A stretch of DNA of 62,539 nt, counting the filler, from Platydemus manokwari (taxonomy: Eukaryota), in the NCBI GenBank assembly GCA_037951405.1. It is 6 parts of 6 records of this genome, joined end to end, with 100 filler letters (N's around TTAATTAATTAA, not from the genome) between each part and the next. Parts side by side here need not be neighbours in the genome. Positions count along the whole stretch, not along the records: positions 10,099 to 20,265 come from JBBMOY011162213.1; 5 more parts are not named here. One strand, given 5' to 3'. Below the pieces are notes generated by a model that ran no database searches, was not told the DNA's origin, and saw nothing but the letters and a program-made list of their open reading frames with translations. The position numbers and the translations under genes are program-made. Shown here piece by piece: positions 10,099-20,265 of this stretch. Positions within the stretch are counted from its first letter, which is position 1; each line of letters opens with the position of its first letter.

Positions 10099-10184
10099 AC
10101 GTGTATGTTAATGATTTGCTACAGCACACACACAAGTGTTTACATCTGGTGTCAAATTCCGGTTATTAAGTTATATACCCAATA
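10099..10184 (-). mobile_element. Mariner-like element end (probably 5' TIR), cut by the contig start
   Basis: Minus strand reads TA-TTGGGTATATAACTTAATAACCGGAATTTGACACCAGATG, a mariner-type TIR following a TA target. It is related to the ends at 20441 and 31198. Confidence 0.6.
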
Positions 10185-11209
10185 GTGCTAATTATTTTAA
10201 TTTATAACTATCAAAAACTCTCTATCACATTTATTTATTAATCATCTGTTAATATTTTAAAATATACCAACAACCCAGTTGAGTTGTTCTGGTATTTAAA
10301 TTTATTTAAGCAATATTATTCATCTCCTGTCAATTAATCTCCACCAACAACTCTGTTAAGTTGTTCCGGCGACCCAAATTTAAACCGTTTCTAATTTAAT
10401 TGAATCCAAGTACAAAGTTCCTCTATACTGAACCCAGTTTAACTAGAGGTTAAATCCTATAAAATCTAAAATCCTAAGCAAATATGGTCCAAGAGGTTAC
10501 GGTTCCACGTAGGCCTAACCTCCAATAATCTAGCAGCTTTAGGGCTCTTACCGGGACACCTAAGAGACCATATACAAAATGACACGCTCTATCAACATCA
10601 TCCATAAATTCAAATAACTATTATTTCACTTAAATTCTAATGAATCTGTTACAATAATACAATCGCTCATTGGTCATTCATTTATTATTTCCATGTAGTT
10701 GCAAAACACGGATATACTCAATTACAATTGACTGAAATTATTTTTATATTCTCTAATTCTGTGTAGTGAAAATTAGCAAAGATATTGCAAAAGTCCTAGT
10801 TTAGGATGCATTGTAATTAAACCTAAACAATAAAAATAATCATTTTAATTATATTTAAGGTTTCTATTGCTAATTTGGGGCATACAATACATCAGTTATT
10901 CATAAGTAGCTGTATTAAATGATAAATAATGAAAACTCAAACAATATTTATTCAAATTTACAATCGAGATTATCCAAATTCATCAAAAGAATTCACCAAG
11001 AAACATTTTTTACAAACATTGCTTTATCATGAATATTTGTACGTCATTATATGTAAGATATATTATAGAATAAATCATAAATAAAAATGATCTGAAATAT
11101 ATGTTAATCTAAAGATTATTTCTGATTTATTAAATATGGCGTTAGAAATTAATACAATTAATATGATCTATTTATAATATAATCATTATGATAATACAAT
11201 TTATTTTCA

Positions 11210-14200
11210 TTAATCAAAATATAATGAAACAATAATTATTAAAATTATATTTTTGAATATGTATAATGTATTGTCTAATATTTTATTATTAATATAAAAT
11301 TAGTGATATATAATAGTAACATAAAGTTATAAGTATTCTTTATAAAAAAGTAATTCAAATATCTGATAAAAATAAATAAATTTTACCACTCTTTTGATCA
11401 TTGATTTTTCCATTGCAGAAATTGTATGTGCAGCAAAGTTTCGAATATATTTTACTATTGATTTGAACTGTGCAATTTGACGAGCAATGTTTGTTAATTA
11501 AATTCCATGATGTTTCATTGATCCAACCAATTTCTGTAACGCAGAATGAACAGTTTCTTTGATAAAACATTGTTGCATTATTATTTGCGCAATTATCACA
11601 CACAAGACAGCTAATTTTCCTTGTTGAAACAGGAGCTGGATTCGCAGATAAATTTTCATTAATAGCATTAAATTAATTTAATTTTAAAAATAATGATCGA
11701 AACATGAAAATATAAAATTGAAAATCATGATTAAGCATAGCTCATCAATAACCTGTTATTAAGAAGATTTCAATTAAATCGCGAATTTAATTTTTAACAT
11801 AAAAATGTCATATAATAGAATTGTTATTCTATTAGATAATATGAATAATGGTTAATTATAAATAATAACCTTGAAAAGTTCTTGGATTTTGTTCGTTGCA
11901 GAAATCAGTGTTACAGCAAAACCATCTTTGAACTTTTGATTGAAGACATTTCAGTGAACACGTCCGTGATATAAATTTGTCATTGAAATCATATGACAAA
12001 CCATGCATTATAGAAACACATTTAGAACAATTGGTATTGATTTGGATATTTTGAACTGCTTCACTGCAGTTTTCGCAAATACTGCATTTAATGTTTCTGT
12101 TAGTTGGCCATTCTAAAATAATATGAAAGTCGATAAGTATTGAAAATTCAACTTCATATTTTATTTTCATTTTAATCAGTTCGCTGAAATTCAATCAAAG
12201 ATTTTCTCTATTAGAATTAAGGAAATAAATAATCTTTTCATAGAATCTATTTGTTTTACAAACACATTGATTAATTGCATTTCAAAGTGCTTGAAATTGT
12301 TTTAATTATCTATCCCGGATTGAATTATCAAAATGAATAATTTTATCGATCGTGCTAAAATCCTTTAATTGTATGTGTTTCTCTTTCATGTGGATCAAAC
12401 CGTAACATAGTGTATTCTCGATGTTAGTGCCTTAATCAATATTATGTCTCAAAATTTATTCATTATTCTTCACAAATTTTTTTTTGTTTGTGCATTTTTT
12501 ATTCATATTTAATTATTATGTAAACTAAAAAAATATATAAATAAATATAATAACGATTGTTTTTTCAAATATCTTTTTTCTTACACACATTCTTTAGGTT
12601 TCTATAATTCATTTTCACTGTTAATTTAATGAAATATTATCTTGCAGCAATTTCAATATATATTTTTCTTCAATCTCGCTGAGTTTGATATTCTGTCTTT
12701 AGAGAATTTTAGGCGGTTTTATTTGTAAAATATTAATTGAGAAATATTTATGCAAAATTTAATAATAGCTTATTTATTTTTAAAGTATGAAATATTTATT
12801 TCTGGTTTTCAGCACTACTTGCTACGAAAGTCATTAAACAGTTGGACCCAAAGTCTTTTATATGTGGCATTAATTACGATTTGCCGAGTCAATACAACAT
12901 CGGTAAATAAAATACGTGAGTGACTATCGAATATTCTGAATATTTGAGAAAAGAAATCACAAGTATCTTGACTTACATCTACAGAATATTTATCATTGTC
13001 TTGAGTAGAAATATTATATATACAAAGATTTTTAAAATCAATTTTTATTTAAATAATCTTTTTAAATAGAAAATAAATTTTGATGACAAAATTACAAATA
13101 ATCAATTTAATTTGTTAATATATTTCGTTTACAAAAAAATTTAACTTTAAAGTCATCGTATTGGTTTCAATTTCTTATTTTATCACCTAACTATGAACTA
13201 TGATTGTAAATATTTTGATAATAATCTCAAATAATAATTTATTAATTTAATTCCAACCTGTAACTGTCTTTTGCAAATACACATTGCAAAATGAATTTCT
13301 GCAGCATGATGTCACAGCTGAAGTGTTTGTGATTGAAAAATAGCACTCTGACGAACAGGATTTGTGTAGTGTTACTTTGTTGCCTTTTTGATTAGCTTTT
13401 TTCATATATGTTAAACAATACGTGCAATTATTGTTAAAATCACGAATTTTATTATAGAAATTGCAATTTTGACATTCCTGACATATGATTCGACCTTTTT
13501 GTCCTACATTTAAAATAAAAATATCAATCATATCATTTATTTTTGATAAATAAAATTCAATTTATATCTTGAAAAGTAGTTGAGATTAACCTGAGTATGA
13601 TCCTGTTTTATTTGCATTGCATAAAAAGAAATTGCAATAAAATATCGGTAAATGAGAATAGGAAATTAATTGAGCTACATCCGTTAGGCAATATTTTGAA
13701 ATGATTTTTGATTTTTGAAAAATCTTATCACTCATAATGCTTATCAAACAAAATTGACAATGATATTCAATGGAAAATTGATGGCTTTCTTTACAATGTT
13801 GGCAAACGAAACAATGAACACCTTGGCGAGCATCTAAAATAATAAAAAAGTAAATATTTTCAACCAAACAATAATAAATAAATTCTTGAATCAGTATAAA
13901 GATTCATAAAAAAGTTTAAATATGAATAATAAAATTTCATACATAAATTCTTTATATTGTTTTCTTTATTGCATAAATCAGTATTGCAACAAAATGTGCT
14001 TCTATTACTTTCTAAATCAGGATATTCACAATTTGGAACGCATGATTTATTAATAAATGTGTTTCCATTATAATTCTTAAATCTTGACAAACAAAATGTG
14101 CAATTTGTATGTTCAACCGGTTTTGATTCGTTATTTTGACAGTTTTGACAAACGTGGCATTTGATAGTATAGGCCATTGAGCACCCTGATTGATTGTTTA

Positions 14201-14281
14201 AAAGTTTGTATAAAAATATAAACATGATTTAAACTTACTCATCAAGACTAAAGCTGCAAATAAAATCAATCTGGAACTCAT
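11210..14281 (-). CDS. Five-domain Ly6/uPAR (three-finger) protein with signal peptide and hydrophobic C-terminal (GPI-signal-like) tail, 7 exons, about 443 aa
   Basis: Exons: 14281-14239 (MSSRLILFAALVLM), 14185-13943, 13833-13591, 13503-13258, 12112-11870, 11635-11387, and 11274-11210 (DNTLYIFKNIILIIIVSLYFD*). All introns are GT-AG and phase 1; total 1332 nt. Each internal exon holds one CxxCxxC...CxxC...C..C...CCxxxxCN domain (domain 2 lacks two of the cysteines). Confidence 0.85.
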
Positions 14282-17169
14282 TATAAAAATGAAATGAATG
14301 TTTCTTAAATTCTATTTATAGATGGTGATTATGAGAGAATATGGACACCATATATGTAAAGGATAAAAGTATAATTGGGTAGAAAAAGTAACTATGACAA
14401 CTAATTATCGCTGAAAATTCAAAGAATTTTTTTGTCTATATTCAAGTTGAAACAAATACCTGAAGTTTGCATTGTTTGGCTTATCTCCTTACAATCTATT
14501 AGCTTTTAAGGTTAGTCATTTAGAAAAATAGGTAATAAAAACAGTTGTCTATATGTGCATGATGAAATTTACACAAATGAAATATGATATTCTCCAAAGT
14601 AGCAATCCAATAATATTGTCATAAATTTATTTTATTAAATTTGCATTAAGTGTTCACAAAAATATACAGATTGTGTAGGATAAAACAATTTTTTCAACTT
14701 GCTATTCGTTTATTAATGTGTGCATTGGAATTTCTATATTTCCGTTTATCTTGTAGCTAACTAGAATGTAGATTCCTTTTAATGTGAATATTTAAAATTA
14801 ATGTTGAACTCTAAGTACACCTCTAGTTGTCAATAGTTGTCATTTTGATAAATATTATTTTATGAAGCAAAATATTTTACTCATAATCCATTTCATTTTC
14901 ATTTACCTTTCCAGACTTAAGAGTTACTTTTTATTTATTTTTCATAAGGCCATTTTTAGTTTAGTTTTTCTAGTGGAGTTGTTGTTAAAAAAATTGCTCA
15001 GCGAGAAAAAAGAAATATTAAATCAGGTGCAACAACAAATGTCTATAAAATATATTTTTATTTTTATTTGTAAGTATCTTTGGATCATTTGATGATGATA
15101 AATATAAAAGATTGAATAATAATAAAAAATTAAAATAAATCTAGAATGTAGGATTAAAAGAATAGATTAAGGTTTAAATAAATTAATGCTATTAATTAAA
15201 TGTCATAACAATGATAAAACGTCAATCAGAAAAATGATAACCCTTAAATACAAAATATAACGATTCTTTATTCAGGAAAACCATATAATTGAAAGTCCAG
15301 ATGAAAATAATTTTTTCCGATTGATATAACTGGTCAAAACATTGAATTTGAAAATAATATATTTTATATTAAATAAGCCGATAATTTTTCTAAAAGAAAG
15401 ACGGAATAAACACTTGACATGATCAAACAAGAACGACATTGATTTGAATCCAAATATTTAAATTTTTTCTGATCCAAACATCCGATTTTACAAATAATAT
15501 AAATCAGTACTCATTTCACTGCAAATATCGAAAATAACTATTTAAACAGTTTTAAAATTCCCGCATTTACTCAACAAGAATCCACTGTAACTGCTTTGAT
15601 ATTGCTTTTAAATTCGATTTCTTTAAATAAATCTTGTTTAAAGTAAAAACGTATTATTTGTGTAAACCTTGATTAAAAGTGTTAAACAAATCATGTGCAT
15701 TGATAGAAATTCTGACATACTGGATCAAATAAAAAGTAAAACACATCATTCAGCAGATCATACAGCATTTTAAGATATTAAATAAGTTGTTGATAAATTA
15801 ATAGAAGTCATTTATTTCTGTGTGTTAACAGTACTTCAATTTTTAGAGTTATAAACGTCAATGAATCTAATTTATCCTTACCGATATATCTTGAAGCAAA
15901 TTTTCATTAGTTAGTTAGTTTCATATTTTAAAAATTAGGTAATATATTATTTGATTTGATTTCTTTAAAATTCCATTTTAGAAATCAAAGAAAACTTGTG
16001 TATTTTTTGGATAAATTATTTTATCAACCGAAACGTAATCATTTCATTATCAGAAAGTGACAAATTATTAATCATGTAGTATATTTGAAGATAGCTGTGT
16101 AATTCTTTTTGCTAGTATGAATCGATGAAGAATTTATTTTGAGACCCATCTCTTAGAAAGACATGCTGATATGTAATTAATATAATAAAAATGCGGATAA
16201 TAGTTTAATAATTTACTGACAGTAATGTGGTATCACTAAATCATCATAACAACATGGGCAAAGATAAAGAGAAAATAATTTACTAATAGACTAAAACGTA
16301 AATTTTTTCATAACTTTAATGGGATAAATTATATGGCCTATAAATACGGACTATAAATTCAAGATCAGAATCATAATATTTTTATTATCTTCTACCTTTT
16401 GAAAGTATTTTATTTCACTGAACAATATTTTATCTTCTAATAATCAAGAATTGTGTTTCGTTGCTATGATACATAAATTTTTTTATACCTACCACGTATG
16501 ATTTACAAATAAGTAATTTATACCTTTTTGTTGGTACCAACACAAGCGTTACCACGGGAGTTATCTTCAAATGATCTTCAATAATTAATATTAATATTCA
16601 CCATTTCTAAATGATAATGATAAATATCAAGATAACCATGATGTGTGACTTGCTGAACAATGTCATTATTCTATTGTTAACGTTTAGACAAGGAAATCAT
16701 CACCATTGTTTTATATGAATGTTATAGACTTACTTTTTTACAGCAGGACACCGATTAAAACAACGTTTATTCAGAGTTCACCAAAGTTTTCCCAATGTTT
16801 TATTTCAATTCAAACATCAAAGTAAAATTTTGTGTGAAATGACATGATAATACAAGACGTCTCTCATACTGAAACAAAAAATGGACAAAAATAATTAATT
16901 CTTTTGCCTATGGCGAATAATCGTGTATCATAGAAACAAGACATAATTGTATAAGTAATGAAGTACAGATGAATGAAAAAAGATACCATTAACAGTAGGA
17001 ATCTAATAATATTGTGATATATCGATGGAAATTTGATATCATATCAATCCAGAGCAATACAAGTTTTTTGTTCTTCTTAATATATATAAATTATGTAATG
17101 ATTATGCAATAAGATAAGTATGTTTATTAACAATTTTTAAACGACAATCATTCTGATTCCCAAACAAGC

Positions 17170-17512
17170 ATGACTGACACGCCATAATTTAAAAGAAAGA
17201 GATCTTGTTATGAAGCTTCCTTCAAGCTTAAAGTCAGAAACTTTGAAGAAGCAAATGGTAACTGGGCTGCTTCCAGAGAATTCACAATTCCGCAGACAAA
17301 TGTCAGGTTGTGGAGAAAGCAGAAAAAATGTCTTATTGAGCTGCCAAAAACTAAAAAAGCTTGCAGGGGCTTTCCAGCCAAGTACCCGGATTTGGAAAAA
17401 GAAAACTTAGGGGAGCGTTATAGTTGGGTATGTCAAAAAAGACCACTTTTTAAATTTAAAAGTAGGGGGAGCATTATACCTGGGTAGGCATTATACTTGG
17501 GTGATTACGGTA
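17170..17512 (+). mobile_element. Internally deleted pogo/Tc2-type DNA transposon: Brinker-like DNA-binding domain relic plus right TIR
   Basis: Frame from 17170 reads MTDTP*FKRKRSCYEASFKLKVRNFEEANGNWAASREFTIPQTNVRLWRKQKKCLIELPKTKKACRGFPAKYPDLEKE, matching the pogo/POGK-type N-terminus. It ends in GCATTATACCTGGGTAGGCATTATACTTGGGTGATTACGG-TA, a Tc2-like terminus with TA target. Confidence 0.8.
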
Positions 17513-19293
17513 GGTAGAGATCCAAAACAGGAGTTGATAAAAAAACGTAACCCGATATGAAAATAAGTAGTCGATTCTATTAGCGGACTTTGTTTGGAAA
17601 AATGTTTTGTGGTGCATGAAGCAAATCATTGCAGAGAGAATTTTCTTGAATTTAAAACAAAAGTTGTCGAGTTTTTTTACCATTAGAATATCTCACTAAG
17701 CAAAACGAATGAAGATTGAGCTGGTACATTCTCATGCAATCACTGAACGATTAAAACCATCAGACACGATATCCGGGAATTTTTCTTTAGAAAAGAAATC
17801 TTTAATTCATATGATACAGAAAATTGCACAAGTCATTGCTTTTGTCAATGATAGCTTGATAAGAAAAAGCAAAAATCAATAATTATATATGATACAACTT
17901 TATTGCAAACTACTGATTATATTGATTAGATGAAGTGTGTTTTATGAAATTACCATGTTGGATTAGAAAGCTAAATTGCAATGGCTTTTCATTTATCAAC
18001 TTTCATTGATCAGGTTGCTCATAAATTGTTGAATGAAATTATTATATTTATAAACTAGCGAAATCGATATGTTGTGCAGAAAATATTTTCTAATATTGAA
18101 GAGATGGAATGTAAAAATTATAATTGATTCATTTCATGATAATATTTCATATTTACTTCCACTCATTTATTGAAAAACGTCGATAAATCAAACATAAAAT
18201 AATCATTGATTTATACCGTCGTCATGAATGGAATAGTGGCTTAGAAAATGTCTTTAAAATCCCATCCAGTTTACAGCTTTTTTATTCATTTAGAAGAACT
18301 TGATTTTTAAAACGAAATAACAGTCAATTAATTTAATAGCTTCAAAAGTTAAGATTTGATTATTGAGACAATTATCGATTTTTTCGTTTTAATTTTATAC
18401 GTTCAAGCAAATATTTTCCTTTCATTTTATATACAAAGTTAGATATGTATTTTATCTTAAAAATGGGCTATATTTTTTGTAAGATTTCATAAAAATATTT
18501 ATAGCTTTTGTGTGTATTAAGTATACAGATGAGAAAGATGGAAGGGTTTTACAATAGATTTATACTGCAAGAAAACATGAATTATTTAGAATTACTAAAA
18601 TGACTTTTAAATTAACTAATACAAGTAATAATACTGAAAATGAATGAATTCCGATATTTATAGTCATTTATATTAAAATATCGATTGACTGTGATAAACC
18701 CTTTTATGTCGAACCTTGATAGTTTCACTCTGGTTATATTGCATCCAGAAAAGTCCACTTCATTGAAATCATTTTATTATTTATCAAATAGTTTTCAAAG
18801 AGAAATGACCATTAATATACCGAAACCGAAGACAAGACATTATAGGAAACCCATAACAAAATAAGAAGACTCTACCATCAAAGTACCGCGAAAATTCGGA
18901 GACAACGTGTAGAATTTTATGAGGTTTTAATTGATTTAATCTATCACCACACATCAAAAACGTTCGCCAATAAGCAGCTTTTCAAATGAATAATTTTTTA
19001 AAGGAATATTTTTTTCTTTTTTCCCGCGCTAATATTTTTCGTCGAAAAATTATTCGTTTTTCATATAACAGAATCAGTGCAGAATCAAAGGATTTTATTC
19101 ATTATAAAAGAGACGGCAAAATATTCCAATCCCTACCAATACTGAAATATCCACTCTATTAATGTTATTGAGGAAAATGATTCCAATAATATTAAAAAAA
19201 ATTATAGTAAAAATATCAATATTAATAAGGATATTAATAAAAATAGCTGAAATATTATTTATTGTTTATTAATAATAAAAAGTGCTAATAATG

Positions 19294-19423
19294 NNNNNNN
19301 NNNNNNNNNNNNNNNNNNNNNNNNNNNNNNNNNNNNNNNNNNNNNNNNNNNNNNNNNNNNNNNNNNNNNNNNNNNNNNNNNNNNNNNNNNNNNNNNNNNN
19401 NNNNNNNNNNNNNNNNNNNNNNN
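19294..19423. other. Scaffold gap (130 N, no spacer motif)
   Basis: Plain N run, unlike the 100-nt spacers. Confidence 0.95.
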
Positions 19424-20265
19424 ATTTAATAGTGGGCTACCTGTTACAATTATGATAGATCAGATTACCAAAAACTGAACTTTTTAAAAATGATTTTAAG
19501 AATTAATCAAGCCAAATAATCCACAAAATCCCAACATTCTTATATTTAATTTAAAAGCGTTGTTCTCCATGAAATCCAATAAACCTTTGATATTTGCTTG
19601 ATTTCATAAAACATTAATTATTGGGTTTCAAGTGAAAATATTTTCCCAATACTCCCCGTTTGACGATAGTAACGATTTCAAAGACTTTAAACAACAAAAA
19701 AACATAATTTTTACTTGGTGTTCGAATGAAAAATATAGCTATGATATACACACATGTATATATATACATAACGCGATTAGTTTATAGTTCAAAATTTTCA
19801 ATAAATAATTCTTTCATTCTCTATAAACTATTCTTAATATTTAGAGACATTTCTAATTGATGTGGCAGAAAATTTAAATACTAGATTACTTGGAATATTT
19901 GTAATATTTATTTAAACATTCGTTGAAAGAAATGATTGATAATAATTTTATTTATAATAAATAATGATGCAGTAACTCGATTAAATGTTAATGTTGATCA
20001 TTTCTGTATTTTCCATTCTGTTTATAATTTTTATCAATCATTGATTTTATTACTGATTTATTTAAACTGTGAATTCTCGAATGAAGTTCATAATATTTTA
20101 AATTTAGAATATCTAGCATAATAAAAAAATACTAAAACATACTGTTTATTTTCTCGCTTTGAATAAATATATATAAAATAATTTGATTAATGAAAATCAT
20201 AATAACAATCTAACATGTACTATTTATGATATCGATAAATTAAAGCTAATAAATAATTCTAATTC

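What the first reader, a model, noticed from the sequence alone, without database searches (positions are those of the whole stretch)
11210..14281. One gene stringing five divergent three-finger (Ly6/uPAR) domains, one per exon, between a signal peptide and a GPI-like tail
Seen: the five Cys-rich ORFs in the track lack their own start or signal peptide. They splice in frame behind a single 43-nt signal exon and before a hydrophobic last exon, giving about 443 aa. The domains share little beyond Cys spacing and carry many N-x-S/T sequons. Known: most Ly6/LU proteins, including schistosome SmLy6/CD59-like proteins, have one domain; uPAR has three and CD177 four. Inference: this is a lineage-specific multi-LU surface or mucus glycoprotein built by tandem exon duplication, possibly a multivalent receptor, defence factor or channel modulator. 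It is the best candidate here for an undescribed system.
Basis: partly seen in the sequence, partly recalled or inferred. Interest (0 to 1): 0.72.

Follow-up and report, generated by a model that had tools for sequence, protein, structure and literature searches.

The report
Five-domain Ly6/uPAR surface protein gene
This minus-strand animal gene most likely makes one secreted-pathway, probably lipid-anchored protein of five three-finger (Ly6/uPAR) domains, one per exon; that is unusual for a flatworm-type Ly6 gene, but multi-domain proteins of this family are already known, and no RNA data were available to confirm the splicing.

Summary
On the minus strand, 14281..11210, a 43-nt leader exon, five exons of 243-249 nt and a 65-nt last exon join through six GT..AG introns. 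All six introns are phase 1, and the sum is 1332 nt (443 codons). Each middle exon carries the Ly6/uPAR signature (C-x2-C near the start, CC-x4-CN at the end). Domain 1 passes Pfam's Toxin_TOLIP cut-off. Models of domains 5 and 2 match only three-finger structures. Domain 2 has lost Cys7 and Cys8 together, a loss known from multi-domain LU proteins.

Controls support one gene: exon GC exceeds intron GC, no other leader exon exists, and no other acceptor gives a hydrophobic tail. No RNA run exists, so the junctions, exon usage and anchor remain inferred.

Drosophila has predicted proteins with 2-44 LU domains. A 433-aa five-LU protein is already deposited for the rotifer Brachionus plicatilis. 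Among described flatworm Ly6 proteins the maximum is two domains (Sm29).

Verdict: a real gene, a new member of a known kind, of moderate interest.

The parts
14315..14320 (-). TATAAA motif 34 nt upstream of the start codon; possible core promoter.
   Evidence: This is a motif match in AT-rich DNA and is weak evidence.
14239..14281 (-). Exon 1, 43 nt: start codon plus the hydrophobic core of the signal peptide (MSSRLILFAALVLM). The donor is GTAAGT.
   Evidence: The mean Kyte-Doolittle value of the core is 3.2. An in-frame stop lies 6 codons upstream, and there is no AG between that stop and the ATG.
13943..14185 (-). Exon 2, 243 nt: LU domain 1, with ten domain Cys plus one Cys in the leader region. 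It also supplies the likely signal-peptidase site (CSMA|Y).
   Evidence: Pfam Toxin_TOLIP scores 23.7 bits against a cut-off of 21.2. Atlas neighbours are all LU/three-finger families.
13591..13833 (-). Exon 3, 243 nt: LU domain 2, with 8 Cys. Cys7 and Cys8 (the 7-8 disulfide) are both missing.
   Evidence: Alignment A1. The model has pLDDT 71, and its best matches are three-finger proteins, Z 6.3.
13258..13503 (-). Exon 4, 246 nt: LU domain 3, 10 Cys.
   Evidence: Pfam Toxin_TOLIP scores 14.2 bits, below the cut-off. The domain aligns in register with the others.
12113..13257 (-). Intron 4, 1145 nt, the only long intron. It holds a 45-nt tandem repeat (13051-13136) and no LU remnant.
   Evidence: One DNA contig of run X1 skips 12170-13038.
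11870..12112 (-). Exon 5, 243 nt: LU domain 4, 10 Cys.
   Evidence: It is 41% identical to P0001, an exon-sized ORF on a 530-nt public contig. The similarity starts and stops at the predicted exon edges.
11387..11635 (-). Exon 6, 249 nt: LU domain 5, 10 Cys.
   Evidence: The model has pLDDT 80.6. In an unbiased search, the 38 best of 48,161 chains are all three-finger folds (Z 8.9 down to 4.0), and the next best chain scores Z 2.5.
11210..11274 (-). Exon 7, 65 nt: a 21-residue tail ending in the hydrophobic stretch IILIIIVSLYF, then D and the stop. Candidate GPI-attachment signal.
   Evidence: It uses the first usable phase-1 acceptor after the exon 6 donor. None of 651 other AG sites in the piece gives a comparable hydrophobic C-end. 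Its GC is only 10.8%, so it has no compositional support.
11200..11205 (-). AATAAA motif 5 nt after the stop codon; possible polyadenylation signal.
   Evidence: Such motifs are common by chance in AT-rich DNA.

Best explanation
One protein-coding gene of an AT-rich animal genome, probably a flatworm, is read from the minus strand. Its seven exons are joined into one mRNA for a 443-residue precursor.

The precursor has an N-terminal signal peptide, five consecutive Ly6/uPAR (three-finger) domains joined by linkers of about 15 residues, and a short hydrophobic C-terminal signal. That signal is exchanged for a GPI anchor. The mature product would be an N-glycosylated surface protein that displays five disulfide-locked three-finger modules as a protein-binding platform.

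The gene arose by repeated tandem duplication of one symmetric phase-1 exon, followed by long divergence.

Domain 2 has lost the 7-8 disulfide. That bond is required for the stability of lone LU domains but is dispensable where a neighbouring domain packs against loop 3. So the domains probably work as an assembled unit, as in uPAR.

Shown: the domains, their fold, the exon phases, and the absence of other leaders.

Inferred: the splicing of all exons into one mRNA, the cleavage site, the GPI anchoring, and ligand binding.
For: Gene model:
- The exon/intron model has six GT..AG phase-1 introns and an intact 443-codon frame.
- Exon GC is 29-33%, against 12-22% in the introns.

Domain identity and fold:
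- All five domains carry the LU signature.
- Pfam Toxin_TOLIP is above its cut-off for D1.
- The profile of the five domains matches Lynx1 (E = 0.002) and SLURP-1 in the PDB.
- The D5 and D2 models match three-finger structures only. In the wide search there is a clean drop from Z 4.0 to Z 2.5.

One gene rather than several:
- Only exon 1 provides a leader, and no alternative ATG + hydrophobic + phase-1 donor exon lies in any intron.
- Only the start of D1 gives a small-residue cleavage site.

Tail:
- The hydrophobic tail is unique among 651 control acceptors.

Multi-domain context:
- The concerted loss of Cys7 and Cys8 in D2 fits the rule for multi-LU proteins (PMC6600238; Sm29 in PMC4492491).

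Relatives:
- The closest relatives of the profile are flatworm Ly6 proteins that have a signal peptide and a hydrophobic tail.
Against: - There is no transcript evidence. The only public run that holds the stretch is DNA contigs running through the introns.
- Four donors are weak (GTTAAT, GTTGGA, GTTATT, GTATGA).
- Exon 7 has intron-like GC (10.8%), and its hydrophobic stretch is only 11 residues.
- No signal-peptide or GPI predictor could be run. The spliced product has no reference, so it was not submitted to any tool.
- D2 and D5 get no Pfam hit, and D3 and D4 are sub-threshold.
- Because all the exons are symmetric, any subset would also stay in frame.
Confidence: 0.6

Rival explanations
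1. The locus is the same, but the five symmetric exons are used as alternative (cassette or mutually exclusive) exons. One leader and one tail exon would then serve a set of single- or few-domain Ly6 isoforms.
For: - All introns are phase 1 and the exons are nearly equal in length (243-249 nt), so every combination stays in frame.
- Leader + one domain + tail gives about 116 aa, the size of ordinary flatworm Ly6 proteins (109-126 aa).
Against: - Only the start of D1 offers a good signal-peptidase site after exon 1 (junction residues).
- D2 lacks the 7-8 disulfide that lone LU domains need (PMC6600238).
- No docking/selector-type pairing was found between intron ends. The best z was -2.75 among 15 pairs, and there is no conserved intronic element.
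- The introns (87-234 nt) are not short enough for steric exclusion.
Confidence: 0.15
2. The same five-domain chain is made, but it is released as a soluble secreted protein. Either exon 7 is not used (read-through after exon 6 ends after 10 more codons), or the tail is not a GPI signal.
For: - Exon 7 has GC of 10.8%, like non-coding DNA.
- Its hydrophobic stretch is short, at 11 residues.
- Secreted LU proteins are common, and the five-LU rotifer protein P0002 has no evident hydrophobic tail.
Against: - None of 651 control acceptors produces such a tail by chance.
- It is the first usable phase-1 acceptor after the exon 6 donor.
- The related flatworm Ly6 proteins end in similar hydrophobic tails.
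Confidence: 0.1
3. Two or more separate Ly6 genes lie in tandem (for example D1-D3 and D4-D5, split by the 1.1-kb gap), with leaders that were missed.
For: - LU genes usually occur in tandem clusters (PMC6600238).
- Intron 4 is far longer than the others.
- Read-through after exon 4 meets a stop 3 codons on, so a three-domain product is possible.
Against: - No ATG + hydrophobic + phase-1 donor leader lies in any intron. The single weak candidate, in intron 4, is not signal-like.
- The in-frame sequence upstream of D4 carries acidic residues.
- There are no tail exons after D1-D4.
Confidence: 0.07
4. The array is silent or decaying and makes no functional gene product.
For: No expression data of any kind are available, and several donors are weak.
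Against: - All five exons are open, in DNA where only 0.29% of such frames are open.
- All structural Cys and the CN motif are kept despite divergence to 21-35% identity.
- The only Cys losses are a matched pair.
Confidence: 0.05

Closest known systems
Sm29 / SmLy6D of Schistosoma mansoni and the two-domain Ly6 proteins of Trichobilharzia (P0003, P0006)
   Same: - They are flatworm Ly6 proteins with a signal peptide, tandem LU domains and a hydrophobic C-end.
- The domains start C-x2-C-x2-C.
- One domain has lost the C7-C8 pair (PMC4492491).
- They are among the best matches to the domain profile (E = 1.9e-9 and 2.5e-4).
   Different: - They have two domains, not five.
- In Sm29 and P0006 the lost disulfide is in the first domain; here it is in the second, and D1 keeps all ten Cys.
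- Sequence similarity is low, and orthology is not shown.
Mammalian multi-LU GPI proteins: uPAR (3 domains), C4.4A, Haldisin and TEX101 (2), CD177
   Same: - Consecutive LU domains lie in one GPI-anchored chain.
- The domain units are flanked by phase-1 introns.
- One domain lacks the 7-8 disulfide (PMC6600238).
- The D5 model superposes on uPAR domain 1 at Z 7.9, rmsd 2.1 A over 67 residues.
   Different: - Each vertebrate LU domain is split over two exons; here there is one exon per domain.
- In mammals the domain without the 7-8 bond is always the N-terminal one.
- There is no sequence-level orthology and no known ligand.
Brachionus plicatilis hypothetical protein RNA42694.1 (P0002, 433 aa)
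   Same: It has a signal peptide followed by five LU domains and is of nearly the same length. Pfam finds five Toxin_TOLIP/UPAR_LY6 stretches.
   Different: - Its five domains are near-copies of each other, joined by Thr/Pro-rich linkers, which indicates a recent internal duplication.
- It has no evident hydrophobic tail.
- It comes from a different phylum, so the equal domain number is most likely an independent origin.
- It is uncharacterised; no paper in the held library links Brachionus with Ly6 or uPAR.
Predicted Drosophila proteins with 2 to 44 LU domains
   Same: They are invertebrate proteins built only of repeated LU domains, and some of their domains lack the 7-8 bond (PMC6600238).
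   Different: They are known only from a review statement and were not compared by sequence here. Their expression is also unverified.
Lynx1 / SLURP-1 (single-domain mammalian Ly6)
   Same: They are the best solved-structure sequence matches to the domain profile (E = 0.002 and 0.0045).
   Different: They are single-domain modulators of nicotinic receptors. The similarity is at family level only.

Membership tests
Ly6/uPAR (LU, three-finger) domain family | Ten (or eight) Cys within 60-110 residues (criterion quoted in PMC4492491). | tested here: met
   D1, D3, D4 and D5 have ten domain Cys in about 64 residues. D2 has eight.
Ly6/uPAR (LU, three-finger) domain family | N-terminal C1-x-x-C2 motif and C-terminal C10-N motif. 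| tested here: met
   Both motifs are invariant in all five domains.
Ly6/uPAR (LU, three-finger) domain family | Score above the curated cut-off of a family profile. | tested here: inconclusive
   D1 scores 23.7 bits against the Toxin_TOLIP cut-off of 21.2. D3 (14.2) and D4 (9.7) are below it. D2 and D5 have no hit. Flatworm two-domain relatives also get no Pfam hit, so the profiles are insensitive for this branch.
Ly6/uPAR (LU, three-finger) domain family | Three-finger beta fold. | tested here: met
   D5 model: the 38 top chains of 48,161 are all three-finger (Z 8.9-4.0), and the next scores Z 2.5. D2 model: top matches are three-finger, Z 6.3. D1, D3 and D4 were not folded.
GPI-anchored Ly6 surface proteins | N-terminal signal peptide. 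| tested here: inconclusive
   Exon 1 gives an n-region plus a 10-residue hydrophobic core, and the start of D1 gives CSMA|Y. No signal-peptide predictor was available, and the joined sequence was not submitted.
GPI-anchored Ly6 surface proteins | C-terminal GPI-attachment signal (small omega residues, spacer, hydrophobic end). | tested here: inconclusive
   The tail of 21 residues has S/D/N candidates for the omega site and an 11-residue hydrophobic end. It is unique among 651 control acceptors. No GPI predictor was available, and there is no biochemical test.
Multi-LU proteins (uPAR/CD177/Sm29 type) | Two or more LU domains in one polypeptide. | tested here: inconclusive
   The frame-compatible exons and the lack of other leaders argue for it. 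No transcript data exist.
Multi-LU proteins (uPAR/CD177/Sm29 type) | [quoted passage not shown] | tested here: not met
   D1 keeps Cys7 and Cys8. The loss is in D2. Fish and amphibian multi-LU proteins also break this rule (PMC6600238), so it does not define the wider class.
Multi-LU proteins (uPAR/CD177/Sm29 type) | Domain units flanked by symmetric phase-1 introns. | tested here: met
   All six introns are phase 1. Unlike in vertebrates, each domain is one exon, not two.

The most novel reading that the evidence does not exclude
The five symmetric phase-1 exons are a combinatorial cassette. One leader and one anchor exon are spliced to different single domains or subsets, up to 31 in-frame combinations. 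One gene would then give a repertoire of Ly6 surface proteins, a way of diversifying three-finger proteins that has not been described.
Probability: 0.12. Interest if true: 0.65.

Novelty: new member of a known kind. Interest (0 to 1): 0.35.

Why it matters
Flatworm Ly6 proteins are prominent surface (tegument) molecules, and some are vaccine candidates, yet their functions are unknown. Those described have one domain, with Sm29 the only two-domain case.

A five-domain member with one domain per exon would extend the known architectures in this lineage. It gives a clean example of domain gain by tandem duplication of a symmetric exon. It also offers a natural test of the idea that loss of the 7-8 disulfide marks domains that pack against neighbours.

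It does not define a new kind of system. Longer LU arrays are already predicted in insects, and a five-LU protein is deposited for a rotifer.

Tried and rejected
Searches that found nothing:
- A word-based protein search with D1 and with the transposon-like ORF gave no candidates. The organism could therefore not be named.
- Rfam and tRNA scans of the piece gave nothing.
- The search for RNA runs found only one DNA-contig run. Laying it showed contigs running through the introns and no spliced form.

Tests that came back negative:
- A sixth LU exon or remnant in the 1.1-kb intron or the flanks: none.
- Separate leader exons for D2-D5: none.
- Alternative last exons: none with a hydrophobic end.
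- RNA pairing between intron ends, which could enforce exon choice: not above shuffles. The inverted repeats are AT-rich and unremarkable.

The 530-nt contig of P0001 and the Brachionus locus could not be read.

Full report
**What is there**

The piece (10099-20265) is very AT-rich, at about 24% GC. On its minus strand five Cys-rich open frames lie between 14228 and 11358. None begins with a credible start or leader.

I placed splice sites by eye and checked them by script. This gives seven exons:
- E1: 14281-14239, 43 nt
- E2: 14185-13943, 243 nt
- E3: 13833-13591, 243 nt
- E4: 13503-13258, 246 nt
- E5: 12112-11870, 243 nt
- E6: 11635-11387, 249 nt
- E7: 11274-11210, 65 nt

All six introns begin with GT and end with AG, and all are phase 1. 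Their lengths are 53, 109, 87, 1145, 234 and 112 nt. The split codons read R, Y, G, E, A and D.

**Is it more than chance?**

- Only 0.29% of 243-nt frames in the non-exon DNA of this piece are free of stops. Here five lie in a row on one strand.
- A profile built from the five domains scores 96-105 bits on each of them. It scores at most 5 bits on any other frame of the piece, so there is no sixth domain or remnant.
- Exons 1-6 have 29-33% GC, against 12-22% for the introns.
- Exon 7 is the exception at 10.8% GC.

**What the domains are**

The five exon products align with eight invariant Cys and the asparagine of the final CN. The pattern is C-x2-C-x2-C ... C-x2-C ... C-x3-C ... CC-x4-CN, and pairwise identity is 21-35%. 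The criteria used for schistosome and Drosophila Ly6 proteins are met: ten Cys in 60-110 residues, C1-x-x-C2, and C10-N (PMC4492491).

- Pfam's Toxin_TOLIP model passes its cut-off for D1 (23.7 against 21.2 bits). It is sub-threshold for D3 and D4, and D2 and D5 get no hit.
- The related flatworm two-domain proteins get no Pfam hit either, so the profiles are weak for this branch.
- The five-domain profile finds Lynx1 (E = 0.002) and SLURP-1 (E = 0.0045) among solved structures.
- Language-model neighbours of D1 are all LU/toxin families.

I folded the two domains without any Pfam support:
- D5 has pLDDT 80.6 and D2 has pLDDT 71.4.
- Foldseek lists almost only three-finger toxins, Ly6 proteins, uPAR and TGF-beta-receptor ectodomains.
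- By structural alignment, D5 reaches Z 9.1 on irditoxin, and Z 7.9 (rmsd 2.1 A, 67 residues) on uPAR domain 1. D2 reaches Z 6.3.
- In a search of 48,161 representative chains that does not depend on Foldseek, the first 38 rows for D5 are all three-finger folds (Z 8.9 to 4.0). The next row drops to Z 2.5.

The fold assignment is therefore firm.

D2 lacks Cys7 and Cys8 together, which are the two partners of one disulfide. According to the review PMC6600238, removing this bond destabilises single LU domains. Its natural absence is a hallmark of domains inside multi-LU proteins: the N-terminal domains of uPAR, C4.4A, Haldisin and others. Sm29 shows the same in its first domain (PMC4492491). So do the Trichobilharzia two-domain hits. 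Here the loss is in the second domain.

**One gene or several?**

No RNA evidence could be obtained. The only public run that holds the stretch consists of contigs that run straight through the introns, so it is DNA. The case for one gene therefore rests on sequence logic:
1. Exon 1 gives a typical n-region and hydrophobic core, followed by a consensus GTAAGT donor. An in-frame stop lies six codons upstream, and no acceptor lies in between.
2. No intron contains another ATG + hydrophobic + phase-1-donor exon. The one weak candidate, in intron 4, is not signal-like.
3. Only the start of D1 gives a small-residue cleavage site (CSMA|Y).
4. The exon 7 acceptor is the first usable phase-1 acceptor after the exon 6 donor. 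It yields a 21-residue tail with a hydrophobic end (11-residue Kyte-Doolittle mean 3.18). None of 651 other AG sites in the piece yields a 15-35-residue product with such an end.
5. The missing 7-8 bond of D2 fits a multi-domain context.

The weak points are four non-consensus donors, the intron-like composition of exon 7, and the fact that symmetric exons allow any subset to stay in frame.

I looked for RNA pairings between intron ends that could enforce exon choice and found nothing above shuffled controls. There was also no conserved intronic element.

Whole-protein homology searches, signal and GPI predictors and inter-domain modelling are therefore missing.

**Origin**

Faint DNA repeats at about 350-nt spacing link exons 2 and 3, and the acceptor regions of introns 2 and 4 resemble each other. 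This is as expected after tandem exon duplication.

The duplications are old:
- The domains are only 21-35% identical.
- P0001, an exon-sized ORF from a 530-nt public contig of some relative, is closer to D4 (41% identity) than D4 is to its sister domains.
- Its similarity starts at the acceptor and ends at the donor of exon 5.

**Relatives and organism**

A profile search of 1.84 billion representative proteins gave only eight hits at E <= 0.001:
- P0001;
- Ly6 proteins of trematodes and a tapeworm (Trichobilharzia, Clonorchis, Calicophoron, Paragonimus, Taenia);
- one rotifer protein.

This suggests a flatworm, or at least a related spiralian, from a poorly sampled branch. The species could not be named.

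The rotifer protein is Brachionus plicatilis RNA42694.1, 433 aa. It has a signal peptide and five LU domains that Pfam recognises. Its domains are near-copies joined by Thr/Pro linkers, so it is an independent and recent expansion, not an orthologue.

**How it most likely works**

By analogy with GPI-anchored Ly6 proteins of flatworm teguments and with uPAR-type receptors, the product is most likely an N-glycosylated surface protein. It has 13 sequons, and an N-C-S/T site before Cys4 is kept in four of the five domains. Its three-finger modules would bind extracellular protein partners, and D2 would be packed against a neighbour.

Only the building blocks are shown. Anchoring, assembly and binding are inferred. 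The linkers are short and not mucin-like, so a mucus role has no support.

**Novelty**

- Multi-LU proteins are well known, and predicted Drosophila proteins reach 44 domains (PMC6600238).
- A recent survey of invertebrate genomes treats proteins of 'at least one' LU domain as the standard architecture in all phyla, flatworms included (PMC13719153).
- A five-LU protein is already in the databases for a rotifer.
- Within flatworms, the described families have one domain, and Sm29 is the sole two-domain case (PMC4492491; PMC8763315).

The gene is therefore a new member of a known kind, unusual for its lineage. It is worth a cDNA check but is not a new system.

Noticed in passing
window 17188-17484 (+), within the GC-richer island 17099-17598: A 99-codon open frame resembles the N-terminal helix-turn-helix of pogo/Tigger-type transposases. 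Pfam BrkDBD scores 22.2 bits, just under its cut-off of 23.4. It is probably a transposon relic, and no close relative was found by word search.
   Followed up: partly
window 12170-13038 (intron 4): One DNA contig of run X1 skips 867 nt here and carries 27 other letters instead. In addition, 31 of the 51 laid contigs are only 95-99% alike. This suggests a second haplotype or paralogous copies of the gene, with an indel in the long intron.
   Followed up: no
window 13051-13136 (intron 4): A 45-nt unit is repeated 1.9 times in tandem, at 75% match.
   Followed up: no
P0001 (137 aa, 530-nt ENA contig): This exon-sized ORF is 41% identical to domain 4. The similarity is bounded by the predicted acceptor and donor of exon 5. 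A related organism therefore carries a homologous LU exon with the same boundaries. Its contig could not be fetched.
   Followed up: partly
window 19294-19423: An assembly gap of 130 N lies here and was left untouched.
   Followed up: no
window 10460-10600: A short stretch is GC-richer (about 33-40%) than its surroundings. It holds a 43-codon minus-strand ORF. There is no Rfam or tRNA match, and its nature is unknown.
   Followed up: partly
P0003 and P0006 (Trichobilharzia szidati CAH8834312.1 and CAH8834309.1): These two two-domain Ly6 proteins have neighbouring accession numbers on one chromosome-scale record. In P0003 both domains lack the C7-C8 pair. In P0006 only the first domain lacks it. 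This looks like a small cluster of Sm29-like genes.
   Followed up: no
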